NCBI GenBank assembly: GCA_963924565.1
Contig: OZ004609.1
Coordinates: 28,644,001 to 28,708,000 of the forward strand
DNA length: 64,000 nt
Source: Ascidiella aspersa
Lineage: Eukaryota
Direction: 5' to 3'
Shown here: one piece after another, positions 8,101-64,000 of the stretch
Layout: every line of letters begins with the position of its first letter
Position numbering within the stretch: the stretch's first letter is position 1
Program-made: the position numbers and the translations under genes
Notes under the pieces: model-generated
What the model saw: only the letters and a program-made list of their open reading frames with translations
Told to the model about the DNA's origin: nothing
Databases searched by the model: none

Positions 8101-11100
8101 ACCGTGCAGACCTTCTTCGTAAAGCAGTGCCAAACAGGTAAAACAGCAAATATAAAAATAATGATGTACGATGACTTAAAGCAAACTTCTATATCAAATA
8201 TATGCGGCTAAAATTATAGAAGGTTCTTGAACTTTTTCAACTGGCGGACACATTTTGCTTTCTTGAAACAATACGAGACTCTATCCAATTTTCTAAAAAA
8301 AATCAAAAGCAAGGTGAAAGCATTAAATAAACAACTAAATATTGTAAACAACATGTATTTAATTATCTTTAAACTAGATAGAAAAAGGATGTGCTACTGC
8401 TTTTGCTCGAAACAGCTTTTCAGTCAAAATATTTAAAATATGTTTTCCATGCAAAAAATTGATAAAAATAAATCCGGACTTCAGTTGTAGAACTACTGAT
8501 TTAAGGCAATACTAACCACGCAACTAAGAAATATATGCTTATTACTGTTATGTTGATGGAATTTTTAACAGAAAAGTACTTCCCAAAGTCGAAAAGGTGT
8601 TGCCCGCCAACCTTAGACAGATTCACACAATCATAACTTGTTCGGGAGCGCATTGGAATGTTGGCAAGTTAGAATAACCTACCCTGGTATAATGCAACGG
8701 CACCAAATTGACTTTATGAGACATCTAAAAGCATGAGCTGCATTGAAAAGTTGCCTATAATTGAATGCTTTTTTTTTTAATTGGCGGAAGATTTTCGATA
8801 ACGATGGTGTAAGTATACCAGACCAAAATATAAATATTCTCTAAAACCAAATTACCCACTGATCGTCCTTTGACAACAAACATGTTTATTTAACAAAAGT
8901 TCGTCCTAATTTAAATGAACAGGTATCTCACAGCCACACAACAATGTACACTTTTGCACAGATAAATAAATACAGTTCCTGACTTTTGAGGGGTCACGGT
9001 CACAGTATGCGATTCCAACTTGTCTGAAGAAGACCTAACCCTGGATAAATTTAGAACAAAGTTGTTAGAAGTTCTTTAAACATTTCGGTGGATGCTTCCA
9101 GCATAATTAGTGCATTTATGGATTGCTTGCAACTAAGCACCACTCTGAGACTGTTAAGCTGCCCGGACATGTGCAAACGATAGTTAAAGTGGTATTAATA
9201 TAAGCCTTGCTTGCCCTCAACAGTGCCGCTGCAGGAATCATTCTTGTCCTCAAAACACATCGGCTGTTTTGGGACCGACGTCAACCCCCTTTCCCTCCGG
9301 CCGGTGAAGGCTCCCCTCTCGTCGCCGGCGGGATGCTGGCACGCTTGCAACACCAGAAAAAGGCCACTGGCGGCGGTACAGAGCGACACCGGGGTGTGTT
9401 TTTGCGGCCAAATGACTACGAGGTAAAGTGGGGTACAAACACTTACTTTTCAAATTGACTCGATTAACGTTCTAGTGACTTGCTATAAAGTCATACTCGA
9501 CAATTCGACATACATGGCCCCTTTTTATGCCCTTATATGGTGTTTAACAAGGCTTCGATGAAGTCGATTTGTTTAAATAGCGAATCTACTGAAATTACTC
9601 GGGTGTTTAAGAATGTAACCTGTAAAACTGATGTTATTTAAAACTAGAAAGATTTAAATGTATAACAACACTTGGCTGTCCATTTTTTGTAAAGTATCGC
9701 ATGTACAGTTTAGTTACAGCCCGAAAGTCAAACTGTTCCGAGAGCAGTTACAACACTATATAAAAAACAACATGCTGTAAAACAATATGTGTTAGATTAG
9801 TATAAACCTTAACAAAACTATGGACAAATTAAACTATAAATCCCTATAACTTGCTTTATTATTTCTAGGTAGGAATAAACTACGCAAAAACAAAAACTAA
9901 TCGGCGCAGAATATGGCAACCAAGGCGACTTTTAACCAAGATTGATATACACACAAGTCACACATAATAGTTTCATGAGCTCGACTTTTATCTACGTCGT
10001 TGACGTTTGTGTTCAGTTTTCACTACAACAAAAGGCTCCCTGGCTGCTCGAAAGAGGAGCGACTGGACGTCTACAGAACCATGGTGGAGGATCCGCGATG
10101 CGAGCTCCTTCAGCTGCTTCCTTTAAATAATAGGAGGAAAAAGACCGGCCTGGTGTCGTTTCCCGGCTCCGGCAACACGTGGACACGCCATATGATTGAA
10201 CTCGCCACCGGTTTTTATTCAGGCTGCGCTTACAACGAGATTCTTCTTCACGAGGAAGGTTGGTTTGGGTTTTTCGTCGTATGGCATGCGAAGACATTTA
10301 GGTCAAGGTTTACTGATTTGTAAATCACAGGAAATTTTGTTACTATATAGTTAGATCCTGATAGGTATCCCATAGCTAAAGGTAATGTTGTAACAAACTT
10401 AAGCGTTTAGAAGGCCTAGCAACGTTTATAATATACAATAAGTTTGAACTAGTTCTCATGTTGTTGGATTAAAGGATTTTGAATTTACAAACTACTATGG
10501 CCGCATAATAAATTTCCTCTAATGGCGACGCCTATTTTACTAGATTTAAAATAGTTAGCCACAGCTGTATTTGCCCAAACTATATCTTACTATTGCAGGT
10601 TTTCTTGGAGAGCTACTCAAGCCGATAGAAGGGAGGGTCAGGGTCATCAAAGACCACATCCACAAACTGGAAAAGGCAGAAAAGTACGATGACTTCATTC
10701 TCATCATTCGCAATCCCTACAATGCAATATTGGCCGAATTCAACCGAAACGCAACGGACGGAAATCACACCGGTTTCGCAACCGAGAAGCAGTACAGGGA
10801 AAGTAAGATGGGCATAACAATAATTGATATGCACCCTGTGAATACTGCATACAATTTTAGTTGTCTTTATCTAGTATAAACTTGTTTGATTATACTAAGT
10901 CTAACACACGGAAAGCACCCACATAGCACTTACTAAGCCTTAAAAATCAAAAGTAGTAATATTTAAAGATAAAAATATAGCTTTCAAAGACGACAAATTT
11001 ACAGCAAATGCGTTCTGGTGACGAAATTAATTACAATAATGTTAAAGACCACACAGAAGTTGGTAGCATATTTTATACATTTCGAATAATTTTAATTATT

Positions 11101-12749: not shown

Positions 12750-15700
12750 TTAACCGTTCGTCTCGTTCTTGCCGACAACCTTGTTCACGGCACGTTTCAC
12801 ATTGGAGAGCTCGAGGTTCTTGAGCTTTGCGGCGTGCAGCATTGCCTGTATAAAGCCGGTGCCTTGCTTGGCGTCCTCCTTGGTCTGCTGGAAGCGACTT
12901 GGAACTATCGAGGTGGTTGCCGCGATGGGAGCCTTGTTGTTGTCCTTGCTCAACATCTTCATTGCCTTCTTGCGGAGGATCTTCTGCGCCTCCGGGTAGT
13001 TCTTCACCACGTCGTATAGGTCGTTTTTGAGAAGCAGAAAGAGCGTGGTGTAGCCGGGGCTGTAGATGTTGGCCGTACGCCGGTTTCCTCCGCCGATCGC
13101 CAGCAGGCTGATCTCGCCGAACGCGGTGCCAGGGTAGAGCGACGCGAAAACTGTAGAGCGAGTGTCTCCCACCACCTGCACCGAGGTTAAAGTGATTTTA
13201 CCTCTAGACATACACCTTAGCCTGATTTCCGACTTGATTTGAGAAAATATTTAGAATTGGTTCGAGTTATTTGAACATGTAATTCGGCAATTTTTATTAA
13301 ACAAAATTTTGCTCATACTATAGTCTTATTTCTCCTAATAGATACCTTTTTGGTAATTTTGGTGTTCTTACCTAGGCCTACACGAATTTGGCAGATTTTA
13401 AAATGGGTAAAAAGTACTCGTGAGGCCCAACTGTCATATCAAAACAAAACTCAAAATATAACAAATATTCTATATATAGTAATTTATAAAATGTCTTGTT
13501 TACATCACTGACAGTGAATTACAAAACAGGGGTATCACTTTCCCCACAAAACACCGTAAGGTTGGACGCAGTAAGTAAACCGGCATCGCCAATTACATAA
13601 GATATTAAAACACCTACCTGCACCATTCCGTTAGTAATGATGTACATCTCCCTGCCCACCTCGCCCTTCTTGCACACGTAGTCGCCGGGCAGGTAGAGCA
13701 CCGGTTTAAGCTTAAGCAGCAGGTCATAGAGCAGCTGGCGGTCGCACTCCTTGAAGATCTCGACCTTGCTGAGCACGTCCATGTGCACGTTGATGGCGAT
13801 GTCGGTGTGCATCTTGTCGGGCATCTGCTTCAACAGCGCGTTTTCGTCCAGGATGCGCTGCGTGTTCCAGGTGTACTCAAACCAGAGCCGCACCTTTCGT
13901 TGGATGTCGACCGAGATGTGGTAGTTCTGCATGTAGCTGATGCAGGCGTTCTTGTGCGCGCGGTACGTCTCCTGCTCGGCGGCTGCTGAATGCACCGAGT
14001 CACGAACCTAAAGTGAAGAAAAAACTAATGTGTATGCTTCTTGTAGAGTAGAATATATACCAGTTGTCCTTTTTTGTAAAGTATCGCATGCACAGTTTAG
14101 TTACAACACGAAAGTCAAACTGTTCCCAGATAATTTGCTATAACCTGCTTTATGATTTCTAGGTAGGAATAAACTACGCAAAAACAAAAACTAATCGGCG
14201 CAGAATATGGCAACCAAGGTGACTTTTAACCAAGATTGATATACACAATGTGTATGCTTCTTCTACAGTTAAATATATACCGGTTGTCGTATAAAGTCAA
14301 ATAAACATCGGAAAAGGAAATATTTTTAAGCAGAAAACGATTCTGGATGGCAAAACAATGTATAAATGCACCAATTAGTTTGGTACTACGATACTACGAT
14401 ACTACCCTAAGTTAGGATATCGGCTCCTTTTAGATAATACTAGACATCTCTAGTATATACCAGTTGTAGCATATAGCAAAACATACATATCTAGTTCAGT
14501 AACAGGCATTGATTATAAGCCCAAGTTCTTAGTTACATTAAAATGCTATAGTTTTAAGTGTCTGGTTTTGACCCTATTACGACTATGATATACCATAGTT
14601 GTATTTTGGTCTAATTTCGAACTGTGTTGGACGATTATGTTATTCTAATTTGGGTATTATTCCTGGATTATTTTTAATTTCTAAAAACTTCTTATAGGGA
14701 AGTGTATCATGTATGAACAAATCGGCCCAAAATTTACTCATTTGATTAATTGACAACGATTGTTTGGGGTTGTAAATAATAAAAACAAAATTATTCTTGT
14801 ATATAAATGTATCTTAAACAAATAAGTAATATACAGCCTTTCGACTTAATGGTTATAGTTATATAAGCAGTTCGAGTTCAAACCGTCGCCGCTGCGAAAA
14901 AAAAATCTTGTAAACGCCAAATGTCACTGCTCATTCGGTTTCACGCTTAACGAACCTGTCCGATCACGATAGAGAAGATAAAAAGCCCGCAGAAGTAGTT
15001 GACCAGCTGTATGTAGTACTCAGTAGTGGTCACTGGCTCTGGTACGTTACCGATCGTCACGGTGGTCATGAAGGCCCAGAAGTAACACCTTATGTAGGCC
15101 ACGCCCTCCAGGTTATAACCCCACTCGCTCTTAAAGTCGCCCATATACGAGATGTAGTAGTAGAGGCAGGCGTCCAGGTGGATTGCGTACAGCAGGTAAC
15201 CAGTGGTGCGCACGACGCGAAAGATGTAGGCCTGCTTGAGAATCATCTCGAAGCGATTGTTAAACTCAAAGTACGAGTCGATTTTCGCGAGACGATTGAT
15301 TCTGAACACGGCCTTGACGCCGAACTTTAGATACAACAGGTCAGTGGGAAAAACAGCAATCAGGTCGCGTTTAAAGCGCCACGTCTTCAGATAGTGCGAA
15401 GAAGTAGCGCCTCGCTCGGTTTGCACGATTCCGCCCAGCAGGTACTGCCGGCGCGTTTGGAAGAGCGCGCTGTCGATTAGGTACACGGCGTCGGCCAGGT
15501 AATCAAGCACAAGCCAGGCGCCGAGGTTGTCCGGCGTCTGGTAGGGGAAGGAAACTCGCAGAGGCACGCAGAAGGCGTTGTACATAAAGCACACTGTCAC
15601 CACGAACTGATAGGCCAGGTACACGCCGTCGCTTTCCGGGTTGATGGTGGTAGGAAAGCGGTAGGCTATCAGGGTGGCCAAGAGGTTTTTCTTTGACGTT

Positions 15701-15915
15701 ACGTCGTGCTGGAAGACGGAGTCGGCGGGTTGGTGCTTACTCGCGTGGCCGTTTTCAACATCCTCGTCGGAACTGCTGTCGTCCTCAAAGAGGTGCTTCT
15801 CCATTCTCCTGGCTCGCTCGCTGCAACGGCGGTGCCAGTTCGAGAAGGCGTGCACCACCGCCGGATTCTGACACCGGTTCCGAATTAGTTCATCTTCTTC
15901 CGCGACCGAATACAT
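12750..15915 (-). CDS. Cyclic nucleotide-gated channel beta subunit (CNGB/TAX-2-like); exons 15915-14956, 14007-13618, 13175-12750 (~591 aa; start codon uncertain)
   Basis: S1-S6 transmembrane segments, S4 FRINRLAK, pore TIGNVPEP lacking the alpha-subunit Glu, C-linker, and CNBD motifs YLPGDYVCKKGEVGREMYII and FGEISLLAIGGGNRRTANI typical of CNGB. Both introns are phase 0. Confidence 0.92.
14027..14288 (+). repeat. Copy of WSCD intron sequence (9677-9744 plus 9844-9953) at 14065-14247, flanked by a 42-bp direct repeat (14027-14068 and 14247-14288)
   Basis: Near-identical text, e.g. TTTCTAGGTAGGAATAAACTACGCAAAAACAAAAACTAATCGGCGCAGAATATGGCAACCAAGG, occurs at both sites. Confidence 0.9.
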
Positions 15916-41970: not shown

Positions 41971-44900
41971 TTAATCCACGTCAACCTCGGAAAGGGCTAG
42001 TCGCGAGCGCATCTCGAACCACATGCGCTTGGCGGGCACGTATTCGAGCATGGGTAGGCGGTGAGGGCCGGTGACGGCGAACACGCACAGGCACCGACGA
42101 TCCGGGGCGGCAGCGTCGCCGTTCTCCTCGACCCCAGTGGTCCGGAGCGCGGCGTTGAGTCGCATCGTAGAGAGGAAGGGCTGTACAGGCAGCACCTGGC
42201 CTACGAAGCCCCATGTTTCGTCTTGTGGGCAAAAGGCCTCCACTTCCCAAACGTTGCGGCCTGAGAAGGGGTTGTCGACACCGCCCACCGCCCAAAGGCG
42301 CCCGTCGTGCCCTTGAACCAAGGCGTGAAAGCCGCGTTCGCACATCATGGAGGCTTGCACGTCGTTCCAGCAATCGGTCGACGGGGAGTATCGCAGCGTG
42401 CAGTTGACCGTCTCCCAGTCGTTAAACCCTCCGCACACGTAGATGGCGTCATCGCCGTGACTGGCGCCCGACGACATGTAAAGGCCCTGCGCGAACAAAA
42501 AAAGCGGGTTTACAAATAATATAATAAACTATTAATTTGCCTAATTTCGAGCTCGGTAACTGAAGCGTCCCTGGGCTACATTTGCCTTATTATGTATAGA
42601 TTTGACATTCAAGTGACACTGTTGACAAAATATGCTACCTGAATCACAGTTTACAGAAACGAGTGACTTTTAACGGGAACAGTTGTAAGTATTAAAACAT
42701 TCATTACACGAAATGCGTATTATCTGTGACCAAGCTCGTCTGTAGTCGTACTGACCGACTATAACGGCACGGATGTGCATTATTAACTTAAACTTGGGTG
42801 TAACTTTATTTTCATGATTGCTTAGCATTGTAAGGATTTCGTACAAGGAAGCTGTATGGATACAATTGTTATGATCATTTAAAAGATAGGATTCAGAATA
42901 TCTATGGTGTATTGGCAAGTGCCTGGTGGTTGTCAACCACAGCCTTTACTGCCGCTAAGCCCTTTAATTTCAAAATCGTTAAAACGCACTTGGGAATTTC
43001 CAGACCTTATTGACTGCCACGATTCACGAAACGGTCAACGTGTCCTTTAAATCGTAGCAAACAACAACTCCAAAATGGCGCCCAATATTCGTTACGTTTT
43101 CCATAGGAGTTCCCAACTCAAACGACCAACATTAACAACGATTTTTTCGCAGTTTTTACCTGCGGCAGGTCGGCCATTTTTTCCCAAACGTCGTTTCGAA
43201 TGTCGTAACGCTCACAGGAGCGGAGGGCGCCGTGTCTGTTCCGGCCACCAATGACGTAAATATGTGCGCCAAGGACGCAGGCCACGAAGTCGCCCCTCTC
43301 GACGGTCATGTCGGCCAGCCTGGTCGTGCAGTCCAGGCGAGGATCGTACCGCACCACTGTGCGCCTGTAAGGTGTAAACAGTTTCGTCATGAAGCGTAAA
43401 CTATCTTAGCAATTTAACGTTATAAAATCTACATATAAGTCCAAGTTCGGGTTCAAAACAAAATTCGAAACGGTACGTATTATGTAGGGCTAGATTTAGG
43501 CAAATGGTATGCCATCGGCGATAGAGTCTTGCATTTTGAGGCCGATTGAAACTATTTATAGAAAGAACGATTTAAACTGTGGATATAAGTCAAACTTAAA
43601 AATTCAACTATGTCACTACCCCGGCCCCAATTCCTTTGTACAACAAAGACAACGGCCGAAGCACGGCCAAATTGTCATCATCAAAATAGAATCGCTAGTG
43701 CGCATGACGATGGCGTTTACCCATTGTTGTTTATGACTAACGATTAACGCCGGGAACCCTTTGTTCGTTGTACACAATGCGCTTAACAACACAATGCGCT
43801 TGAATGTAAACTCACGTGTAACTGCAGTTCGCTTTCCGGGTCGAGCCGAGCGCGAAAAGAAAGCCGTTGTGCTCTACCACATTGTGGTAAGGGTCGCGGA
43901 TCGGCTGTTTGCACGAATCTCCGTTGTCGGTCGTCTGCACGGGCGCCGGGGCGTCCTGGATGCCAACCGTGATCCGACGAGACTGCGAAGGCAGCAGCAC
44001 CGGGTTCTGGGCAAGGACGCCGTCGATACAAGCCCACTGCGGCTTACAAGCGCGCAGCTGCGTCTTGGCGGTTTGCAGAAGCGGCTGCTCGAACACGCGC
44101 CTATGGTAGTCCAACGCGGCGCCCAAATGACGTTTGAACACCGGACCATACGCTTCAATGAAGTCGTCCTCCTCTTCACTGTTTTTGTTGTTGTTTTCTG
44201 TCGCGAATTCACGTACGCAGGACAGAATCTCGTCGGCTGGGATCAACGCGAAGCGCACCTCGGTGAGGATGCGATCTAGCTCGACGTCGTCGCACTCGGA
44301 GCGGTTGGAACAGAGCCAACGCAGGAGGACGCGGAGGATCGTGCGCTCGGCGGAGGAGCCGGACGCGTCGCCGCCCAGACGCCCGTCGGCAAGGCAACGG
44401 AGCAGATCTTCCCCGCGGAGAAGCTCAACCTCGGAGTCGTCGGCGTCCAGCTCGAGGAAGTGCTGGAAAACGCGCTCGCAGCAAGCAAGCGCAAAATCGT
44501 CCAGGGCAAGGTCGCGCGCAAGACAGGCGAGGTAGCAACAGTTGTCAGCGTTCAGCTCTTCAAGCAGGTAGGCCTGGCAGCGGTTGATTAGGGGCGCGAT
44601 CTGGTAGTAGAGGGCGACCTTCAGCAGGTCGACGGCGTCGTTAAAGTCAAGGCTCACCTCGGCGGTGTACATGAAGTCGACGACGCGTCGCAGCTGACCG
44701 GCGCCGACGCCGCGAAGCGTAACGGTGCGGTCGGCGGCCTCGCGCATATTCGACGTGAACATGGCGCGGAAGTAGTCGCTGCACGCGGCAAGGACCACCT
44801 TGTGCGCATCGCATCGGATCTCGTCGGCCACCAGGGTGACGTCACAGCAGCAGTGGTGCAGCCGAAGGTCGTTGAGCGCGCCAAGTCGCTCACCAAGGCT

Positions 44901-45236
44901 TTCACGTCGCGGCCCGGCGCAGTTGTCATCGCTTTCGTCACCGCTGTCTTCAGCTGAGGATGCCGAGGAGTAGGCTTGCTCAACGAACACGTCCTCCATC
45001 GGATAATCGACGTTGGTCACTTGATCGGTGGCAGAGGAAAGGCTTGAGCAGGAAGACCCGTCTGAAGAGGGTCGAGCGCTCATTAGTACGATCCGGTGGG
45101 CGTCTACCACGTGCAATTGGCCTGGGACCTGAACGTCGCAGAGGATGCCCACCTTCTGGAACTTGCTCATCTCGTTAAAGAGGTAGGAGGCGTGCTTGCA
45201 CTTCTCCTGCTCTTGCGATAATCCACACAGCACCAT
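41971..45236 (-). CDS. Kelch-like BTB-BACK-Kelch protein; exons 45236-43816, 43364-43160, 42486-41971 (~713 aa)
   Basis: BTB (CDVTLVADEIRCDAHKVVLAACSDYFRAMFT), BACK (ILTEVRFALIP) and Kelch repeats (VVRYDPR, IYVIGGRN, IYVCGGFN, LWAVGGVD). Junctions are in phase. An acceptor AG at 45273-45272 precedes the ATG, so the N-terminus could be longer. Confidence 0.92.
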
Positions 45237-54900: not shown

Positions 54901-56383
54901 AAATAGATATAAGACAAGGCAAACAATCATTTCAAAAGCACTATGACACTGACGTTCTGAAACTTATCACACATTAGCCGATCCAAAGCTCCATGAGTCT
55001 ATGCTTAACTTCTGACGTAGGATTAATAACAAATTCTTGGTATCGGTTGTATATCAGATGTGTGAAGGCTGATTTTAAAACCGAGTACTGAAATATCAAT
55101 GTATAGTTAAAGTTCTTTCAAATATAGTGCTGTTCACAATAAAACGGACAATAGGCTTCGAGTTTCTTGAAATGATTTAAAAAATATTTGTATCCAGAAT
55201 TGATATATTTTGATTACACAGTAGTGAACGGAATCAGGGGGGTTTCAAAAAGGCGTTTCGGCAAAATAATGACTGACCGTAGCCTACGCCGTATACAGTT
55301 AAAAATATTGTTCAACACAGCCAACCGAGTTTTTCTCGGTACGTGATCTACTACACGATCAGGTAGCAGTCTGTCGACTATACCGACCCGGACTTTCAAC
55401 CGCCAGTTCGTTTGTGTTGTGTCTAAGCTCAGGCTCTTGCCGCAGATAAGAGTAAAGTCCAGGTTTCGGTTGCGGGAGTGAAAAAGGTCGTCAGGTCGTG
55501 TCAAGTTCGCGTTGCACAGGCCGTGTCAACTTTTTAATCTTGCAAAATCCTGCTTAGCAACTGGACTTTCGCACTTATGGTTGCTGTGTACATCCAAATA
55601 TTGCCCTATGGCGAAAACTAATTTTCACACTACCTAACTTCGAATGATCAGTACGCCTGGTGGATTTAGCAAAACAAAGGTTCATATAGGTACAGCATAC
55701 CGGAATGCTTTTTTTAGAAAAAATATTAAAACAACCCGTCACTTTAGATTTAGGGTTAAGGAATACGATTTATTTGCGTAATATGGTTGCACAGTTTATT
55801 TGTTTTTACGTTTTCCCCTGATATCCTTTTGTCATAAGTTACGCTGTTCACCCCCAACACTTGCACTTGTGCAAAAGATTATTGAGAAATTCGGCACTAC
55901 AACTTCCAAATTGACTATAGGCCTCTAAGACATACAGTTCCAGTCGTTGGCCCCCAACATTTGCTATTTGTGTCAACGTTTTTTTGGGGGGTGCGAGAAC
56001 TTTTCAAAGGGGGTACGGTGTTGCTGGATCAGGACACAGAAAATGTATTACTGTATTTTATTTCTCTGTTCAGCTAAATGTAAAACTAACTCACATTTTG
56101 TTATGGCGTTGCCGCGTTATCTCTTACTTGTATCAAAATAAAATTACAATGGTTTTGTTATTTAAGCAAATCTGAAAGGGGTTCGAGAATTGGTTGGTGA
56201 TTTAAAAGAGGCGCAGCAAAACGTTAAAAATCACCGCGACCAGCCACCCGACAGTGGTTGTTACGTATAGAAAACCGAATATACTTGGTGTAACATTATT
56301 TCTTATTACTACGACCCAGGCTAATAGAAATTGGCATTGACTCGTAACAGCACAGGAAAAACATTTTATTACAGAAAAAACTT

Positions 56384-56389
56384 TTTATT
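56384..56389 (-). terminator. Candidate polyadenylation signal of the TGF-beta-family gene
   Basis: AATAAA on the minus strand about 510 nt after the stop, with a second one near 56365-56370. Common by chance in AT-rich DNA. Confidence 0.35.
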
Positions 56390-56612
56390 CAAAGTTGTAT
56401 TTACAAATAAATACAATTCTTAAACGACACATAGAAAATAGTGCGGATTATTTACCCGACTTCCACAGTGGCGAATGCGCCATAAAAAATGAAATCGAAT
56501 GTCGAGTTCAATGACGAGTTTAAGGTAAATATCATGAAATGTGTTACGCCAACGCCCCACTAAAATGGGTACGGGCTTTACAAAAAGTGTAAAACGATTG
56601 AATGGTGTAAAA

Positions 56613-56791
56613 CAATGGTTCCCGACCTGTGGTACGCGAAGGTTGTTCTACAAACAACGTTGATTAATGCCAGTTGTAAGCTAAAAATAGATAAAAACAT
56701 GATTCGATCAAATTAGTTGTTCTACAAGTGATACGCGTTGGCAGTACAGAGTGTCCAAGTAGAGCGACAGCGCGAAGGTTGGGAACCCATG
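56613..56791. mobile_element. Short hAT-like MITE in the presumed 3' UTR of the TGF-beta-family gene
   Basis: TIRs CAATGGTTCCCGACCT...AGGTTGGGAACCCATG, flanks GTGTAAAA/GTGGAAAA (7/8). Confidence 0.8.
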
Positions 56792-56899
56792 GTGGAAAAG
56801 GAACGGAGTCATACACGGCGACAAAATAATTTGGACAACGTTTCACTGTCAAGTAAATGTATGTTGTGGCAGCTCTGTGTCCCACGCAATAAATAAGCT

Positions 56900-59800
56900 T
56901 CAGAGGCAGCCGCAATGGCGAGCCACCTCGTCTTCTAAGATCTCGACGGTTATGTCTCCGCCACTGCCGTACGTCATCTGGTAGAGGGACTGGTACGCAA
57001 TGGGCACGCAGTCGACGGTGGGTTCGAACGGCGGGTGGCGGTTGAAGGTTTTTTCCTAAAATGCGTCGCGGTTAGTAAAAGTAACAGAAACGCAATAAAA
57101 TACTTGGTTCCAGTAATAGTGAAATTTAATGTTAGCTTGTTAATTTTGGCCTTTTAATCCATTAAGGAAGGCATAAGTTATAATTAGGATACATTAGTGG
57201 TTGCCCAAATCCAAGTCTAACGATGCAGGTAAATTCCTAATTTTCACCAACTGCTTCTTTAAGTGTTTTTAGTTATCGTGTTTTATGATGGAAATTTTTT
57301 TTAAATGGGTGTATTTTTATGATGTAATGTATTTACAAGGTTGTTCAAAATACGTCGTATTACGAGACTATTCCTCGTTCGAAGATTTCGAGAAACAAAA
57401 CTGTTTGTTTCTCTATAAACATTTAATAAACATCTATATTTCTTCAATTCAAATAGTCATTCGCTTAGGAAAACGTAGCCTTGTTCAAGTTTAGTTAAAA
57501 ACATTATAGGTGCGAAAATGGAACTACTGAACATACCAGGGTCATGGTCAAGGCGTGGTTGGTGGTGTTCATCTGTTCAGAAAGCGGATGACTACAGCTG
57601 CCATAGCATTCGCCCACATCGTATTTTGATGGGTAGGTCAGCTGAAGTTGCTGAGTGTAAATTTGACGGGTTTGATTATTATATGAATAGCTATGAACCT
57701 CTTTTGACTAATTTCCCATAAAAAACAATAGTCAAACTATTTAATTTGTAATAAAATTCGTGTTGACATGGTAGAAATATTGTCATTAAACACTAATTGC
57801 TAATAATTTTTTTTACACAACAAAGCCTAAAGTAACAAGAACAGATCGATTGGCATTACAAATATGACTAATTGAAAATCAACACCAATGGTTTGATGTA
57901 AAAATCATACACGAAATGGCTTGACGCAATTAAAGTCCTTACCCAGGGCTCGACGAAATTGACGTGGTAACTCATTCGTCTGCAAGTCAAGCTGTTTCGC
58001 AATCCTGTGGCACGAACTGAAGGACTGCGGCGTTGTCTTACGTGGCGCCGGTGATCTAAAAGAGCAACAAGGTTCCACGAGCATGTCGACTTTTAAGCCT
58101 ACCCAAACCGCAGAAATTTAGAGGCTTCTACTGATTTCGCAAAAGTGCAGACATCTGGCAAGTTAAATTCTTCTCAACATCCTTTTTCGCTTTGGTGTGA
58201 CATATTGGGAGTTTGGCCAACGCTGCTGATTTTGGTTTATGTCACAAGGAAAAACCTAAAACATTCGTTGGTCTTTCATACATCATCAGCGCTGCACATT
58301 GCTATCATTTCTGTTACGTATAACGCCACGGTTTTAACACTCTTGTATATGGCATATTACAATATGCTGTTGCTACCAGGCATAGCATATACTAAAAACA
58401 AGTTCTCTGAAATTAAGTTCACTATTTTTTTGTGCTAAAAGACACAACTAGGTTGTTTCGTCGTCTTATCGTTTTTTATTTATTTTTTATTTGTGTGTGT
58501 CATTATACTTCGCGTGTTCTTGGGCGGGTTGTGTACATTCCCTGCTGTAGGCTTCCCGGATAATTAGCCGAAACGTCGGACAAATAAATAAATACCAGAA
58601 TAACTCAATTTTGAGTATATTTCAGATATCGTTTGCCAAAATGCGAATTGTGAAATATAATTATAATATCATACGCGCTTACTTTATTTTAAAATAAGGT
58701 TTATAATTGTGGCTAGAATTTTGGGCTCGAAGTTAAATATTGATTACATTTTATTACCTTCACTTATAGTGTTATCTTCATTAGCTATCCTTAACTGCAG
58801 CCGCATTAGTCTGCGTGTAACTAAAACACAGGCCAAACTCAGCGGGGCTTAAAAAGTGAGTGCAAAGTACATTACAAACGAGCTTCGCAACACTGGTTGC
58901 CTTTGTCTCGTGTTTAGCAAACGTTTGAGCGCTGCGGACTTAAAGTGCAAAACAAAGCGTTACCCACCTCTGACGCGCTTTGGCTGAACCGCAGAATTCC
59001 GGTACAAGTCGAACCTGGGTCCTCTGCTCGCCGGCGAGCTGGGATCCTTTTTGCAGAAGAAAGTCAGCGACACCGCGCGCCGCAAGATGCTTATCCGATC
59101 GTCCGTGCTGTTTCCTTTGTATACACACGGATAAAGATTAAAACAAAGCCGAAACCGGCTGGAACGCTGTGCGCCAGACGTCTGCGGAATTGCAGGTGCC
59201 AAAGGCGATGTCAGCCTGTCAGTCACCGGGAGCCACGAAAGGTTTACGAGATACGAGCCCCGCTGACGAGCTGGGAAAACTCCCATTTTGCAGCAACGGG
59301 CCTGGGAATGGCCGCCGCGTGTTTAACAAATGCAGGTGTGGCAGTGAAAACTCGCGATTAGGTGCCTGGCGTTCAATCTAACGAGCTATCGAAAAGTCAA
59401 CAACGAATGCTAATGAAGCTCAATGTTTAAAGCGTTATCGAAGTCCCCCTGTTCCGGATGTCCTGATGTAAGATTCACAAGCAAGGGGTAGAGCTAACAA
59501 AACAAGTATGTGTGAAACGCACATTTAATAAAGCGGCGACGGGGCCTTCGAACACACCAATTTAAAAAATACATTTTTTAAGTTGGTCATTAGCGTGCTT
59601 TATTTTAGATAAATTTCAATTTATTTATTTTTACTTTACACAGGGGCCTTCGTATTGAAATTAGGGGCTGTATAAAAGAACGGAAAAATAACGTGTAGAA
59701 ATTTCGTTGTTTATTTAAGAATAAAACGTATTTAAAATTAAAAATATTTAAGAATAAAACGTATTTCAAGTTACGTAGAAACTTCCGTCCAACGAATCAT

Positions 59801-62800
59801 GCCAGCAAACGAATAACAGCAATCGAATAACAGCAATCGAATTGTTTACTCCTTACAGGCGCATTGCGCAAACGAACCTGAGATGAAGAGTTGCCTTCGT
59901 GGTCGAACGCTGACGCGCAATGTGAGCAGCTCGCCGCTTGATCTAGTCAGCCATCTCCACAACTCGAGTCTTTTCAGGCTTGCGATCATCAGACCGCCAT
60001 CCACTGAGGGACAACTTGCCTGGAAAATACGTCATTTTCAGTGCAAGGAAAAGCGTTATAATAATAATCCCGCTTGCCAATGTAGCTCTCCGTATAAATA
60101 AACTGTTTCATAGCTACCCGTACTTCACTTCTGTTTAGTGGTACAATTCACAAAGGCTGGAACCGAACATATCGATCGTTTTTTACTGGCGAACGATTGC
60201 AGAAAATGCATGATTGGATGCCAAGTCTTTCAGTGGCGTGCAATCTGTTTTCCGGTGATTTTATGTTTATTTTACGAGGTTTACCGAGTACGATGAAAGA
60301 TCGCATTTTGTGAAAAACATAAACATCTTAGTTTTTATGTACATCTTTAATGTTAAGGCAATAGTCAAGAACATTAAAAAATAGCTGACCTAGTTTTAAA
60401 TTAGAAAACAATCTAATTTAAGGAACTTCTGTCTGTAGAGAATTTTATATCCATTTCCCTGTACAGCATTAGAGCATTAGCCTTGCTGATAAACCCAAGC
60501 AAATCCTGCAAGGTCCCTGGTGCTGCAACGAGCGAGCCCAAATTGTGGTTTAAAGTCTGTTTGCCCTAACAGCTTCGGAAAAGTACAAGCTTTTTGCAGT
60601 TCTGCTCGATCGCTAGGTTGAAAACAAAGCCAGCCACGCACTCGGCGACATATGCGCGAGGACTGTAAATTTTACCCAGAACTCAAGTAGCCTCCTGTTC
60701 ACCGATTAAAGTCGTAAATTTAAAATAGCTGTGGTGAAAATTAGCAAACAAGGTAAAATCGGCGCGTGGGAAATTGCAAGGTGGAATGCCGGCCACTCCT
60801 ACAGCTGCAAATAATGACAAAACGCGAGATGTTTATTTTAAATACTTTTAGAGTTTAGGCGAAAATTGCCAGCGGATCAAAACGACGTTATAAAAAAACA
60901 GAGAAAGGTCAACTTTGAAACAAGTGAAATGCGGGTAGTTTTGAAACGGTCTTACTTTCCCTATCGAATGTTACAGAAAGTCGAGCGAAGAATACACCAA
61001 GTCTAAATTATATTATTCGCAAAACACAAATTTTTTTCTTTAACAAATACTACGACAAATCCCTATAAAAGTCCTAATAATAAATTATATTATTCGCTGA
61101 ACACAAAACCAGCTTTTTTTTGAAATAACACGTCATCTCCCTATCAAAGTCATTCGTTACCGAAGTCAAATACCAGTCCAGAGTACGGGAAAAGCAAGTC
61201 AATTTATAGGTATCGCAAAAAAAATATATATAGTTATTATGACCCGAAGAGAACTCATATCAAGCAAACTCTTTACGTTTACCCAAAATAAAATAGAACA
61301 TGTCAAATCAATTTAAGTTGATTGAAACGCACCTGTTCGGCGCGATACAACAAAGTCGTGGTTCCGTTACCAATCGCCTCTACCAGCACTTCGTAGAGGC
61401 CGAATTGCTCTTCAAGCTCGCAGGGACGGGCGCGCTGTAAAACCAAGTCCACCGCCTCTGGCTGACTTCCCTGACACTTTGCGCTACATAAAGAAAAATA
61501 CAGGTGTCAATAGTTGCCCTTTGGTTCAAACCAAAAAAGTTAATTACGCCTAGTATTAGTCTGTTGTGTAAAAAATGTGTTGAAAAATCGTCAATAACTT
61601 CTTTGAAAAAGTAATTGGGCGTTTGTGAGGTTTTGACAACGATGTGTGACGAAAGAAAAACGTGGTATCGTCCCTTAAATTGATAATATTTTAAATTGAC
61701 AAAGGAATATAAATCATCATAGCACCATTGTGTTGTTTTCTGACGATACTTAATTTCCGGGTGAAAAATGTAAAAAATCAATAATCAAGTCCTGTTTAGC
61801 GTAAAGGAGAGAAGGAAGTTTGCAAAGCACTTGTTTGAGGTTTTTGGCAGGTGTTTATTTCAGGTATATGCAACGTGCGGCCAGACAGTGTCGTGTTTTC
61901 CTTTTCCGCAAATTTAATCTGTTCATAGTTAGCTGCACAGATCGTTCGTTTAATTTGAATGCAAGCTGCAATCACTATACGTTCGAGTTTGAAAATATGA
62001 AAGAACAACTGAAGGACAAACCGACCATCAGAATATTTTATCGGTGTTCTTAAGCAATTTCCAAAATTGCTTAAGAACTAAAATGTATTTTCAAACGATT
62101 TGAATCACTGTTAATTTCCTTCAACTTTGGAAAGTACCGATTCCGAATCACTGACAATTTTTCGGTGCGTTTTGAAATCACGTAACATGAATAAAGCTTA
62201 AACCCAGCTGAACAAGAGAAACCCCGGTGTTTTCCCAATCGTGTCGGGTCAAGGTTCTCTAACTAACAAAACGCGGTTTACGGTTCCAAATTAATACAAG
62301 GTACTAACTCATATCTCATATATGGTGTTTCTTGAATAAAGAAGGTTTAATCATAAACTTAACCTAAAGCAGGAAAATTAAATAAATTAAAATATGTAGT
62401 ATTAGCTACTTTTATTATATATTTTTTTAATTTTACTGCGGTATATGTAGTACCATTTTCCCTTTTTATGTTATTTTTTTGCAATGGACCGCAAAGTAAA
62501 TATTGCAAGCAGTTAGCCACATAATTTTTTTGCAAACAAGTTATTTTGACCGCAAATCAAATATTGCAAGCAGTCAGCCACATAATTTTTTGCAAAAAAA
62601 TTACCGCTTCATATCGAAGTTCAAAACCGGTTGACAGAACCAAAAAAAACCGTTCTCTTACATTTTTCCTGGGTGCCGAAACGAAGCTAAGATGGTGTCA
62701 CGGTCAACGTGTTCCAGCGAGCGGTCGACCGGGACCCTCGTCATCCCGCCAAGGCCCGCGATGCGCTTCAAGTAGAACTGCTGCAATTGGTTACGGACGC

Positions 62801-63380
62801 GCGACGAAAAAGCTGCGCAGGTCGCAAACTGAGCCGAGTTCGCCCCGACACCGTTCGCTTCGTCGATCAGCTCTGAATAAAAGCGGTACACGTGACGTAG
62901 CTATTGCCTTGTATATTTGCATTTTGCGGTGTGGCAGCCGTTTGACACATTCGGTCTAATGCGATATTGAAAACAGCACACCTTGGCGTGAATAGAGAAG
63001 GCTGCTGTTTGTCGCAACTAACTTTCAATTGTTTCCGAATATTTATTTTCTTAGCAAACACTGCGTTGTTTCTCGTATAATTTAATTAACTGTCAACGTT
63101 TTTATTGATAAAATATTATAATTAACAATTTGAAGTCACTATAGTTGTACGCGTACGTGCCCTAAACATGTTATTGTGCTATTTCCTTGGGTATGTTTTA
63201 AAGGTTTTATTTTGCACGTTGGTAAATAATATTAAGTAAAGTGAAACCATCGCTTGATCAAAATCGGTAATAAAATAAACAATTAAAAACTCTAGTAAAA
63301 GCAGAAAAAATATTCATATTACTGGTCTGAAAGATAGTTATAATACGTACCTCGTTCGTAAGTGTGCAACATACGATCAC
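56900..63380 (-). CDS. Divergent TGF-beta/BMP-family ligand precursor; 5'-partial, exons 63380-63351, 62872-62662, 61483-61333, 60019-59878, 59114-58968, 58055-57943, 57641(or 57650)-57537, 57055-56900
   Basis: The spliced frame gives a prodomain (DTILASFRH, LWRWL, VSLTFF), a furin site RQRR, then CRRMSYHVNFVEPW/LTYPSKYDVGECYGSCSHPLSEQMNTTNHALTMTL/EKTFNRHPPFEPTVDCVPIAYQSL...EDEVARHCGCL*. This is the cystine-knot pattern C...CxGxC...C...CxC with the BMP NxTNHA helix. All exons are phase-compatible; the prodomain exons are less certain than the mature ones. Confidence 0.88.
58539..58592 (+). mobile_element. Decayed Penelope-like terminal repeat with a minimal hammerhead-ribozyme-like motif
   Basis: TCC-CTGCTGTA-GGCT...AGCC-GAAA-CGTC-GGA followed by AATAAATAAA. 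The core deviates from CTGANGA at two positions. Confidence 0.5.
62487..62597 (+). repeat. Tandem duplication of a ~50-bp unit
   Basis: GACCGCAAA..AAATATTGCAAGCAGT.AGCCACATAATTTTTT(T)GCAAA occurs twice. Confidence 0.85.
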
Positions 63381-63576
63381 CTGCAAAATGTTGAAATTTT
63401 GTTAAGATAAAAATAGAACTTAAAAAATTACCTAAACTAAGTACCGCTTAACATGTTGAGTTACACGGCGTAATTCAAAAGCGTAGTTTTGGGCAAGTTT
63501 TAACATATTTCTTACCACGTGACATGTAGTGTCAATTTTTTTATGGTTTCGTGTCATTAGAAACAGTCGTATAGAG

Positions 63577-63995
63577 CAGGTAACCCAACATTTTTTTCAC
63601 CGTGGACCCTTTTAAAATTTTGAGAAATCAATGTCCCACTATTTTTTTTAACCGTTTGAAAAAATTAATCAACGTAATTTTAGTTAAAAAAAAGCTGGTT
63701 TATAGTGTAACCGGTATTTAAAATGATAAATTGATTTGAAAGCATTTAATCATTTTATCAAATTTTAAAATATTACAATTAATAAATCTAAAAGTAAAAC
63801 GAAGAAAGTTAGCTCAAGATCAAGAAGTAGCTTATTGCTGTACTAGTATTTTTAATAAATTTGAATTTATTGTTATAGTTATAAGTACACTTTTAGTTAA
63901 GTAGAGATGATAAATTAAAAAAATTATTGTTTCAAAAAAATAATTGTTTGAAAATGGCCCCTAGGGGGACATGGCCCCCAGGTTGGAAATCCCTG
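63577..63995. mobile_element. hAT-like MITE in an intron of the TGF-beta-family gene
   Basis: Ends CAGGTAACCCAAC...GGTTGGAAATCCCTG with GGCCCC subterminal motifs as in 1767-2642. The right flank is cut by the window edge. Confidence 0.7.
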
Positions 63996-64000
63996 GTAAA

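What the first reader, a model, noticed from the sequence alone, without database searches (positions are those of the whole stretch)
56900..58055. Hidden divergent BMP/TGF-beta ligand lacking the dimerisation cysteine (CCVP becomes DCVP)
Seen in sequence: three short minus-strand exons absent from the ORF track splice in frame to a ~114-aa mature domain after RQRR. It has six cysteines (C, CYGSC, DC, CGC), and Asp sits where the interchain Cys normally is. Established: only a few family members (Lefty, GDF3, GDF9, BMP15) lack this Cys, and they act as monomers, non-covalent dimers or antagonists. The PL...NTTNHA...TL helix is BMP-like, not Lefty-like. Inference: an independently evolved non-covalent ligand, heterodimer partner or antagonist, possibly an undescribed lineage-specific signal.
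Basis: partly seen in the sequence, partly recalled or inferred. Interest (0 to 1): 0.85.

Follow-up and report, generated by a model that had tools for sequence, protein, structure and literature searches.

The report
Sea-squirt orphan BMP-like ligand, Cys-to-Asp
The three hidden exons are real and end a nine-exon sea-squirt gene for a secreted BMP-like signal from an ascidian-only family already seen in Botryllus and Ciona; here, as in Clavelina, an aspartate replaces the cysteine that normally cross-links the two halves of such signals.

Summary
Three minus-strand exons (58055-57943, 57650-57537, 57055-56900) have canonical splice sites and compatible phases. They encode a TGF-beta cystine-knot domain after RQRR, and GAC (Asp, 57013-57011) sits where the interchain Cys lies in ten paralogues.

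They are the last three exons of an intact gene of about 8.8 kb, nine exons and about 426 aa. Its first two exons lie beyond the window end. All nine exon translations align in order with a 441-aa Clavelina lepadiformis protein ("uncharacterized LOC143449278"), which has the same PTVDCVP.

By eye against a published alignment (PMC4828856), both belong to the ascidian-specific orphan clade of Botryllus Tgfb-f and Ciona "TGFbeta not assigned 4". Tgfb-f is a marker of gonad follicle and support cells whose function has not been tested. Those two keep CC, so the Cys-to-Asp change is a new variant inside a described clade. None of the 115 family members in that alignment has Asp at this site.

Most likely it is a furin-processed, glycosylated BMP-class ligand that pairs without a disulfide, as GDF9 and BMP15 do. 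Its type I receptor site is degenerate. No RNA evidence could be obtained. No earlier scan finding on other DNA reported this gene.

The parts
56900..57055 (-). Last exon (E3): finger 2 of the mature domain, with PTVDCVP and ...HCGCL plus stop TGA
   Evidence: Translation. Pfam TGF_beta 22.3 bits, profile 66-104. 22/51 identical to Clavelina P0003 residues 391-441, 0/500 shuffles reach the score.
57011..57013 (-). GAC codon: Asp in place of the interchain (first) Cys of the CC pair
   Evidence: Sequence. Alignment with 11 paralogues. In the HMMER alignment of P0003 to GDF5, Asp lies under the first Cys of CCVP. The predicted dimer puts the equivalent D405 in the interface.
57537..57650 (-). 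Exon E2: end of finger 1, the CYGSC knot motif, the pre-helix loop and the wrist helix (PL..MNTTNHA); a second in-frame acceptor at 57641
   Evidence: Translation. Pfam 21.8 bits, profile 21-55. BMP6/BMP2 about 27 bits. 18/35 identical to P0003 residues 354-388. Splice sites.
57561..57569 (-). N-T-T sequon before the NHA helix, at the position of the conserved BMP N-glycosylation site
   Evidence: aligned with N-A-T / N-S-T of BMP6 / BMP2.
57943..58055 (-). Exon E1: end of the prodomain, the furin site and the first knot Cys (CRRMSYHVNF..W)
   Evidence: Translation. Best local match to P0003 residues 330-352, 8/500 shuffles reach the score. Canonical AG/GT sites, phase 1 in and 0 out.
58027..58038 (-). 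RQRR, a furin-type R-X-K/R-R cleavage site
   Evidence: Clavelina has RRNRR at the same place.
58968..59114 (-). Prodomain exon C (..ILRRAVSLTF..)
   Evidence: In-order match to P0003 residues 276-294, 10/19 identical, 16/500 shuffles reach the score. Phases fit both neighbouring exons.
59878..60019 (-). Prodomain exon B (..GGLMIASLKRLELWRW..), the block that the published alignment places under the W..FDVT..V..W motif of other prodomains
   Evidence: tblastn E 9e-8, 20/45 identical to P0003 residues 230-274. Own-genome search E 4e-4. The donor matches the Clavelina exon end seen in fragment P0008.
61333..61483 (-). Prodomain exon A (..AVDLVLQRA..)
   Evidence: tblastn E 3.5e-4, 16/44 identical to P0003 residues 186-229, 0/500 shuffles reach the score.
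62662..62872 (-). Putative prodomain exon Z
   Evidence: Open frame with AG/GT sites. Local match to P0003 residues 122-172, 15/54 identical, 0/500 shuffles reach the score. Phases fit. The two first exons lie outside the window: ATG exon at extended coordinates 65725-65571 and exon 2 at 65274-65183 (= L015:9571-9725 and 9183-9274). Both are inferred only.

Best explanation
This is an intact, single-copy gene on the minus strand, about 8.8 kb long with nine exons. It encodes a secreted TGF-beta-superfamily preproprotein of about 426 aa.

It is this sea squirt's member of the ascidian-specific orphan clade that holds Botryllus Tgfb-f, Ciona 'TGFbeta not assigned 4' and Clavelina LOC143449278 / LOC143450705.

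Shown:
- The exon structure, the six knot cysteines, the RQRR site, the N-T-T sequon and the BMP-like pre-helix and helix.
- Asp at the interchain-Cys position, also present in Clavelina.
- Loss of the second Trp of the W-x-x-W finger-1 motif.

Inferred:
- After signal-peptide removal and furin cleavage, a glycosylated mature domain of about 117 aa is released that cannot form the usual disulfide-linked dimer.
- It most likely still pairs through the wrist helix and the fingers as a non-covalent homo- or heterodimer, as GDF9 and BMP15 do.
- With its degenerate type I receptor epitope it may signal weakly or atypically, or modulate other BMP or activin-type ligands.
- By analogy with Botryllus Tgfb-f, the likeliest site of action is the somatic support cells around germ cells.
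For: Gene and family:
- Pfam hits fall in profile order on E2 and E3.
- BMP6 and BMP2 are the best solved relatives of E2.

Clavelina orthologue:
- A phmmer search of E3 against 1.84 billion representatives finds one TGF-beta protein, Clavelina P0003 (38.6 bits, E 9e-5). It is annotated only as uncharacterized.
- P0003 scores 48.7 bits on TGF_beta and about 50 bits to GDF5 and BMP2.
- All nine exon translations find their best local match in P0003 in the same order along the protein. Five of them are reached by 0 of 500 shuffles.

Gene structure:
- All 16 splice sites are AG/GT, the phases fit, and the CDS is 1281 nt with no internal stop in any exon.
- Two Clavelina exon ends (P0008, and isoform X2 lacking residues 82-90) coincide with window junctions.
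- There is one copy in the genome.

Placement:
- The alignment and tree put the window gene with P0003 (support 92/91).
- Clade assignment rests on motifs shared with Ciona NP_001093599.1 in the published alignment: VDLALLRV / VDLVLQRA, GYMMVASLD / GGLMIASLK, Y-D-[VI]-GEC, NHAL..T.E, PT[IV].CVP and HCGC.

Pairing and expression:
- The homodimer model of P0003 residues 331-441 scores ipSAE 0.52 against a best control of 0.00. Runs agree in at least 87% of contacts, pLDDT is 76, and D405 lies in the interface. That mark was reached by 21 of 30 solved homodimers and 0 of 23 solved monomers.
- Tgfb-f expression in follicle and support cells is reported in PMC4828856 and PMC10615308.
Against: - There is no RNA evidence for any splice.
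- Exons 1, 2 and Z are inferred. Exon 2 alone is not significant: 412 of 500 shuffles reach its score.
- Clade assignment to the Ciona and Botryllus genes was made by eye from a trimmed published alignment. No tree was computed with those sequences.
- Ciona and Botryllus keep CC. The shared Asp of this genome and Clavelina therefore needs either homoplasy, hidden paralogy, or a close kinship of the two species that I could not test.
- The dimer model may score from memory of the many solved BMP dimers, and it was made on the Clavelina protein, not on this one.
- Two Asp residues facing each other on the dimer axis could disfavour homodimers.
- Expression in the gonad is only an analogy.
Confidence: 0.7

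Rival explanations
1. The mature protein is a monomeric inhibitor or ligand/receptor trap that works like Lefty or GDF3. Without the disulfide, and with two like charges at the dimer axis, it stays monomeric. It would bind a type II receptor, a co-receptor or another ligand without assembling a signalling complex.
For: - Asp replaces the interchain Cys.
- The second Trp of W-x-x-W, part of the type I receptor epitope in BMP2 (established knowledge), is lost here and across the clade.
- The C-terminal residue after CGC is aliphatic instead of Arg, and finger 2 is strongly diverged.
- Antagonist ligands exist in invertebrate deuterostomes, for example sea-urchin Panda (PMC11239237).
Against: - The homodimer model passes its controls (0.52 against 0.00).
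- The wrist helix and pre-helix loop, which make most of the non-covalent dimer contact, are the best-conserved part.
- GDF9 and BMP15 lack the same Cys and still signal as dimers (established knowledge).
- Panda itself keeps its dimerisation Cys.
Confidence: 0.18
2. It is an obligate heterodimer partner of a canonical ligand made in the same cells (BMP2/4-, ADMP-, BMP5-8- or Nodal-like). Asp prevents covalent homodimers and biases pairing.
For: - The genome holds a full set of canonical ligands.
- GDF9:BMP15 heterodimers set a precedent (established knowledge).
- The helix-to-finger interface is BMP-like.
Against: - No co-expression data exist.
- No partner was tested.
- A canonical partner would be left with an unpaired Cys.
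Confidence: 0.09
3. Artefact or dead gene. Either the Asp codon is an assembly error, or the locus is a decaying pseudogene.
For: - No reads could be laid on the locus.
- Each exon alone falls under the Pfam cut-off.
Against: - TGC to GAC needs two base changes.
- The same Asp is present in five Clavelina protein records from two loci.
- Nine open exons, 16 canonical splice sites, all six knot Cys and the furin site are kept at about 43-50% identity to Clavelina.
Confidence: 0.03

Closest known systems
Clavelina lepadiformis LOC143449278 / LOC143450705 (XP_076805514.1, XP_076807472.1, CAK8690898.1; P0003-P0007)
   Same: - It aligns in the same order over all nine exons and has the same PTVDCVP with Asp.
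- It shares Y-[ND]-V-GECYG.C, the PLS..MN.TNH helix, HCGC plus an aliphatic C-terminus, and a furin site.
- Two exon boundaries coincide.
   Different: - Identity is only 43-51% in the mature exons and 24-44% in the prodomain.
- Clavelina has two near-identical loci, whereas this genome has one.
- Clavelina has lost both Trp of W-x-x-W; this gene keeps the first.
- It is annotated only as uncharacterized, and nothing is published on it that I could find.
Ciona 'TGFbeta, not assigned 4' (NP_001093599.1) and BAF49747.1
   Same: - By eye in the published trimmed alignment it shares prodomain blocks (VDLALLRV, GYMMVASLD, VLSLGF) and mature blocks (YPS, Y-D-I-GEC, NHAL..T.E, PT..CVP, HCGC).
- By exclusion it is the only Ciona ligand left once the other eleven loci of this genome are matched one to one.
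   Different: - Ciona keeps CC (PTICCVP).
- Mature-domain identity is about 40% by eye.
- No computed tree was possible because I had no reference to those sequences.
Botryllus schlosseri Tgfb-f (Langenbacher and De Tomaso 2016, PMC4828856)
   Same: - The paper groups Tgfb-f with two unassigned Ciona homologs (it names NP_001093599.1; the other is presumably BAF49747.1) as a tunicate- or ascidian-specific group outside all major subfamilies.
- It has a furin site of the same type (HRRNRR), has lost W-x-x-W, and has a G.C.G.C context.
   Different: - It has seven cysteines, so the interchain Cys is kept.
- Identity to this gene is only about 30% by eye.
- Its expression is known (gonad follicle and support cells, and cells that travel with germline stem cells) but its function has not been tested.
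Vertebrate GDF9 and BMP15
   Same: They work alike: both lack the interchain Cys and are thought to act as non-covalent dimers. They are gonad-associated and fast-evolving. The two Clavelina paralogues also differ mostly in the mature domain (15 of 26 changes, p = 5e-4).
   Different: - They are not orthologues.
- They carry Ser or Thr at the site, not Asp.
- They keep W-x-x-W and lack the N-x-T-NHA helix signature.
Lefty
   Same: It also lacks the interchain Cys.
   Different: - Lefty lacks the wrist-helix region, has a CC at the first knot position and has a long finger 2.
- This genome has its own Lefty-like gene on another contig (L011, C6:2.908 Mb).
BMP2 / BMP6 / GDF5 (solved structures)
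   Same: They are the best sequence relatives among solved chains. They share the pre-helix P-L, the N-glycosylation sequon, the NHA helix and the knot spacing.
   Different: About 30% identity. This gene has no interchain Cys, no second Trp, a diverged finger 2, and a mature domain split by two introns where the canonical paralogues here have one exon.

Membership tests
TGF-beta superfamily (Pfam PF00019) | Six cystine-knot cysteines in the family's spacing | tested here: met
   C...CxGxC...C...CxC lie in register with 11 paralogues of the same genome. Pfam alignments fall in profile order on E2 and E3.
TGF-beta superfamily (Pfam PF00019) | Profile match at or above the curated cut-off (27 bits) | tested here: inconclusive
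   Searched exon by exon only: 21.8 and 22.3 bits, each below the cut-off but in order along the profile. The Clavelina orthologue scores 48.7 bits over profile 1-104. No joined model was scored.
TGF-beta superfamily (Pfam PF00019) | Signal peptide, prodomain and a dibasic furin site before the mature domain | tested here: met
   RQRR at 58038-58027. Prodomain exons align in order with Clavelina. The ATG exon with a hydrophobic N-terminus lies 1.7 kb beyond the window and was judged by eye only. Pfam TGFb_propeptide is not detected in P0003.
TGF-beta superfamily (Pfam PF00019) | Seventh cysteine for the interchain disulfide | tested here: not met
   Asp (GAC) lies under the first Cys of CC. 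This Cys is not universal in the family: GDF9, BMP15, GDF3 and Lefty also lack it.
BMP/GDF subgroup | Closest to BMP/GDF rather than activin/TGF-beta/Lefty sequences | tested here: met
   E2 gives BMP6 and BMP2 at about 27 bits and GDF5 at about 20. P0003 gives GDF5 at 49.8, BMP2 at 43.9 and inhibin beta A at 21.9 bits. E3 alone is uninformative.
BMP/GDF subgroup | W-x-x-W motif of finger 1 (type I receptor and core contact) | tested here: not met
   The window has W-Q-L-Q. Clavelina has neither Trp, Ciona has W-F-R-H, and Botryllus has a gap.
BMP/GDF subgroup | Placement inside a named BMP clade in a tree | tested here: inconclusive
   In a tree of 13 domains from this genome plus Clavelina, target plus P0003 get 92/91 and adding L013 gives 98/97, but the backbone is unresolved and long branches meet. 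No vertebrate references could be included.
Ascidian Tgfb-f / 'TGFbeta not assigned 4' clade | Clade-specific shared sequence blocks in prodomain and mature domain | tested here: met
   By eye against the alignment printed in PMC4828856 supplement 2, compared. The blocks are listed under Best explanation. This is not a computed test.
Ascidian Tgfb-f / 'TGFbeta not assigned 4' clade | Monophyly with Botryllus Tgfb-f and the Ciona genes in a computed phylogeny | not tested
   Those sequences are available only as text in a paper.
Ascidian Tgfb-f / 'TGFbeta not assigned 4' clade | Seven conserved cysteines, as described for Tgfb-f | tested here: not met
   There are six here and in Clavelina. Ciona and Botryllus have CC.
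Ascidian Tgfb-f / 'TGFbeta not assigned 4' clade | Expression in gonad follicle and support cells | not testable with these tools
Lefty | No wrist helix, CC at the first knot position, long finger 2 with the ..C[IVA]..E..LP.. motif | tested here: not met
   The target has the full helix. The Lefty-like features are in L011 on contig C6.
GDF9/BMP15 | Orthology to the vertebrate oocyte factors | tested here: not met
   By eye in the published alignment: Ser or Thr at the site, W-x-x-W kept, a different helix. The resemblance is functional only.

The most novel reading that the evidence does not exclude
The interchain Cys was replaced by the same unusual residue, Asp, more than once (in this lineage and in Clavelina, but not in Ciona or Botryllus). 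This happened inside a fast-evolving, ascidian-only ligand clade tied to the germline niche. Two Asp residues facing each other on the dimer axis would make pairing depend on pH or a bridging cation, or would force heterodimers. That would be a new way of tuning a TGF-beta signal, and a parallel to the vertebrate oocyte factors GDF9 and BMP15.
Probability: 0.15. Interest if true: 0.6.

Novelty: new variant of a known kind. Interest (0 to 1): 0.4.

Why it matters
TGF-beta ligands without the interchain disulfide are few and behave in special ways: GDF9 and BMP15 in the ovary, GDF3 and Lefty as antagonists.

This gene shows that a chordate-invertebrate orphan clade, whose only studied member marks the somatic cells that accompany germline stem cells in Botryllus, contains both Cys-bearing and Asp-bearing forms. 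That gives a natural pair of variants for testing what the disulfide contributes to ligand stability, range and receptor choice.

It also corrects genome annotation. The gene is missing from the public protein sets I could search for this species. Its relatives in Clavelina and Ciona have no function assigned.

The finding is of moderate rather than high interest. The clade is already described and loss of this Cys is recurrent in the family.

Tried and rejected
No splice and no GAC-versus-TGC check by reads was possible.

Homologue searches:
- The search for homologous proteins was run three times: P0003 whole, P0003 residues 335-441, and a profile of P0003/P0006 plus four window exons. It returned only Clavelina records and a 48-aa Clavelina fragment.
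- The phmmer search of E3 gave two stronger hits (P0001, P0002). They are multi-stretch repeat matches, not TGF-beta proteins.

Joined model:
All searches were exon by exon, by reference.
- Only inside local scripts were the three exon translations laid end to end, to align them with paralogues and draw a tree.
- Structure and complex predictions were therefore made on the Clavelina protein, not on this gene.

Other attempts:
- AlphaFold2 on P0003 with a six-row alignment gave mean pLDDT 38. It is unusable and no fold search was run.
- Pfam on ten upstream minus-strand open frames found nothing relevant. Rfam found nothing in 55000-64000.
- MAFFT with all nine exon fragments scattered the short ones, so I used local pairwise alignments with shuffles instead.

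Species identity:
- Earlier notes say only 'sea squirt'.
- A literature search by assembly size found no match. Ascidiella aspersa at 306.5 Mb in 1,411 contigs is near in size but untested.
- I therefore cannot say whether the Asp shared with Clavelina is one event or two.

Rejected readings:
- A frame-2 reading of 61784-61383 that looked prodomain-like overlaps exon A in another frame.
- A 30-nt mini-exon at 63380-63351 puts a stop in frame.
Full report
WHAT IS THERE. E1 runs 58055-57943, with acceptor ...cttttag|AT, codons starting at 58053 and donor TGG|gtaagg. It ends the prodomain with HRRHVRQRR and carries the first knot Cys. E2 runs 57650-57537, with acceptor ...actcag|CAA and donor CTG|gtatgt. 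It carries CYGSC, the pre-helix P-L, an N-T-T sequon and the NHA helix. E3 runs 57055-56900, with acceptor ...attttag|GAA. It carries PTVDCVP and ends in HCGCL plus TGA. E2 has a second in-frame acceptor 9 nt further in, at 57641. The mature part after RQRR is 117 aa, or 114 aa if the inner acceptor is used.

IS IT MORE THAN CHANCE. Pfam TGF_beta matches E2 (21.8 bits, profile 21-55) and E3 (22.3 bits, profile 66-104) in the right order. A six-frame scan of the whole 308.6-Mb assembly with PF00019 picks out the same two exons among 14 matches. Among solved structures, E2 is closest to BMP6 and BMP2, at about 27 bits and E about 3e-5. E3 alone is uninformative there. In an alignment with the genome's other TGF-beta domains, the six knot cysteines are in register. 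Asp (GAC, 57013-57011) lies under the first Cys of the CC pair in ten paralogues, and the Lefty-like one has Gln. By established structural knowledge of BMP2, that first Cys (Cys78) makes the interchain disulfide. The stretch is single-copy, with no second haplotype contig.

THE WHOLE GENE. A phmmer search of E3 against 1.84 billion cluster representatives gave one TGF-beta protein, P0003 (38.6 bits, E 9e-5). P0003 is a 441-aa Clavelina lepadiformis protein annotated 'uncharacterized protein LOC143449278'. A second, 94%-identical locus is LOC143450705, and there are five records in all. It has the same PTVDCVP. tblastn of P0003 on the window plus 22 kb fetched beyond its end revealed upstream exons in the same order. 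Reading the splice sites placed them as follows:
- A: 61483-61333
- B: 60019-59878
- C: 59114-58968
- Z (putative): 62872-62662
- Exon 2 (putative): 65274-65183
- ATG exon (putative): 65725-65571

The last two lie outside the window, at L015:9183-9274 and 9571-9725. All 16 splice sites are AG/GT, every phase fits, and the CDS is 1281 nt, or 426 aa. Each of the nine exon translations finds its best local alignment in P0003 in the same order along the protein. For Z, A, B, E2 and E3, 0 of 500 shuffles reach the score. For E1, C and exon 1 the counts are 8, 16 and 24 of 500. Exon 2 alone is not significant, at 412 of 500. Two Clavelina exon ends agree with window junctions. Fragment P0008 runs into an intron just where exon B ends. 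Isoform X2 lacks residues 82-90, where exon 2 meets exon Z. The upstream part of the model is inference, and no RNA data could be obtained.

WHAT FAMILY. P0003 scores 48.7 bits on TGF_beta over the full profile. Its mature domain is closest to GDF5 (49.8 bits) and BMP2 (43.9 bits), and far from inhibin beta A at 21.9 bits. In that HMMER alignment its Asp lies under the first Cys of GDF5's CCVP.

The genome holds about twelve ligand genes. By eye they match the Ciona set printed in supplement 2 of PMC4828856 almost one to one. The set comprises BMP2/4-like, ADMP-like, BMP3-like, Nodal, BMP5-8-like, TGF-beta, myostatin/activin-like, Lefty-like (L011), an orphan like Ciona NP_001071837 (L013), and others. 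The Ciona genes left over for our locus are NP_001093599.1 ('TGFbeta, not assigned 4') and BAF49747.1. They share clear blocks with the window gene and with Clavelina:
- Prodomain: RRKWK.FFD, VDLALLRV (window VDLVLQRA), GYMMVASLD (window GGLMIASLK), VLSLGF (window AVSLTF).
- Mature domain: Y-D-[IV]-GEC, NHAL..T.E, PT..CVP and HCGC.

Langenbacher and De Tomaso (2016, PMC4828856) found that Botryllus Tgfb-f groups with two unassigned Ciona homologs, outside every major subfamily, as a tunicate- or ascidian-specific clade. They name NP_001093599.1, and the other is presumably BAF49747.1. They also note gonad ESTs for the Ciona gene. My small tree puts the window gene with P0003 (92/91) and these with L013 (98/97), with an unresolved backbone and a long-branch warning. 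I could not compute a tree with the Ciona and Botryllus sequences.

THE CYS-TO-ASP CHANGE. Ciona (PTICCVP) and Botryllus (..KACCYP) keep the CC pair. This genome and both Clavelina loci have D-C.

In the full 115-sequence alignment of that paper, the first Cys is missing in:
- GDF9 (Ser or Thr), BMP15 (Ser) and human GDF3 (Val);
- the Leftys (Gln, Thr, Lys, Met, Ser and Asn);
- zebrafish Ndr1 (Ser), one amphioxus ligand (Arg) and one Oikopleura ligand (Lys).

None has Asp.

TGC to GAC needs two base changes, and the same residue appears in a second species. Both facts argue against a sequencing error.

In current tunicate trees Ciona and Aplousobranchia (Clavelina) are closer to each other than to Ascidiidae or Stolidobranchia (PMC13746493). 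By eye the Clavelina prodomain is also nearer to Ciona's than to the window's. Unless this species is itself close to Clavelina, the shared Asp therefore means parallel change or hidden paralogy. I could not identify the species, so this stays open.

OTHER FEATURES. The second Trp of the W-x-x-W motif of finger 1 is lost here (W-Q-L-Q) and throughout the clade. In BMP2 these Trp residues belong to the type I receptor ('wrist') epitope (established knowledge). The pre-helix P-L, the N-x-T sequon and the NHA helix are the best-kept part, at 51% identity to Clavelina. Finger 2 and the C-terminus (Leu instead of Arg) are strongly diverged. Mature-domain identity to Clavelina is only about 43-51%. 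By eye, the BMP3-like gene of this genome is nearly identical to Ciona's. Between the two recent Clavelina paralogues, 15 of 26 differences fall in the mature quarter of the protein (binomial p = 5e-4). This mature domain therefore evolves fast, unlike canonical ligands.

HOW IT PROBABLY WORKS. What is shown is a secreted-type preproprotein with a furin site and a complete knot but no interchain Cys. The rest is inferred. The mature, glycosylated domain pairs non-covalently through the helix and fingers, as GDF9 and BMP15 do. It engages receptors atypically because of the altered wrist epitope.

A homodimer model of the Clavelina mature domain (residues 331-441, two copies) scored ipSAE 0.52 against 0.00 for the best of three controls. 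The runs agreed in at least 87% of contacts, pLDDT was 76, and D405 and V407 lay on the interface. That mark was reached by 21 of 30 proteins solved as homodimers and 0 of 23 solved as single chains. The tool warns that a pass for a family with many solved dimers may be from memory. It shows that a BMP-like dimer remains plausible, not that it forms.

The rival readings are a monomeric antagonist, an obligate heterodimer partner, and an artefact or pseudogene. They are scored in their own sections.

By analogy with Botryllus Tgfb-f, a role in soma-germline signalling is the best guess. Tgfb-f is expressed in follicle and support cells around oocytes and testes, and in the cells that travel with germline stem cells. 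Its function has not been tested (PMC4828856, PMC10615308). That analogy is untested here.

LIMITS.
- The three capped protein searches found only Clavelina.
- AlphaFold2 on P0003 with a six-row alignment was unusable, at pLDDT 38.
The exon translations were laid end to end only inside local scripts, for the paralogue alignment and tree.

VERDICT. It is a BMP-class ligand without the dimerisation Cys, evolved independently of the vertebrate cases. But it belongs to an already described ascidian-specific clade, and the same Asp form is already a predicted though unstudied protein in Clavelina. Novelty: a new variant of a known kind. Interest is moderate.

Noticed in passing
window 57641-57650 (minus strand): E2 has tandem in-frame acceptors 9 nt apart (..actcag|CAACTTCAG|CTG). 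Using the inner one would drop Q-L-Q from finger 1, which is where Clavelina is three residues shorter in the alignment.
   Followed up: partly
L001 and L002 (G000:C1:31223589-31223891 and C1:31253338-31253640, same strand): The BMP2/4-like and ADMP-like genes lie only 30 kb apart on the same strand.
   Followed up: no
L013 (G000:C2:17694168-17694278 and the exon about 450 bp upstream of it): A second divergent orphan ligand whose mature domain is split by an intron. It keeps CC. By eye it is the counterpart of Ciona NP_001071837.1 (..W.E.G...WDIS.C.G.C..), and it is the nearest paralogue of the target in the tree (98/97, with a long-branch caveat).
   Followed up: partly
L011 (G000:C6:2908388-2908651): A Lefty-like gene with Q-C at the CC site, no wrist helix and a long finger 2. 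The genome therefore has at least two ligands without the interchain Cys.
   Followed up: partly
L008 (G000:C8:2228494-2228793): A complete but divergent TGF-beta domain (83 bits) for which I saw no obvious Ciona partner in the published alignment.
   Followed up: no
window 41974-45236 (minus strand): A BTB-BACK-Kelch gene (BTB 105 bits, BACK, Kelch repeats) in a GC-rich stretch (up to 54% GC), downstream of the ligand gene.
   Followed up: partly
window 12750-15915 (minus strand): Exons of a cyclic-nucleotide-gated-type channel (Ion_trans 70.8 bits; a weak cNMP_binding hit).
   Followed up: partly
beyond the window end, extended coordinates about 74029 and 75466 (L016, minus strand): Two tandem open frames with a short-chain dehydrogenase glycine motif (..VVTGCTDGIGLAFAK..). 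By eye they look like HSD17B12. They are the upstream neighbours of the ligand gene.
   Followed up: no
Clavelina proteins P0003-P0007: Clavelina has two loci, 94% identical, and both carry Asp. Fifteen of the 26 differences between them fall in the mature domain (p = 5e-4). Isoform X2 lacks residues 82-90 at an exon junction.
   Followed up: partly
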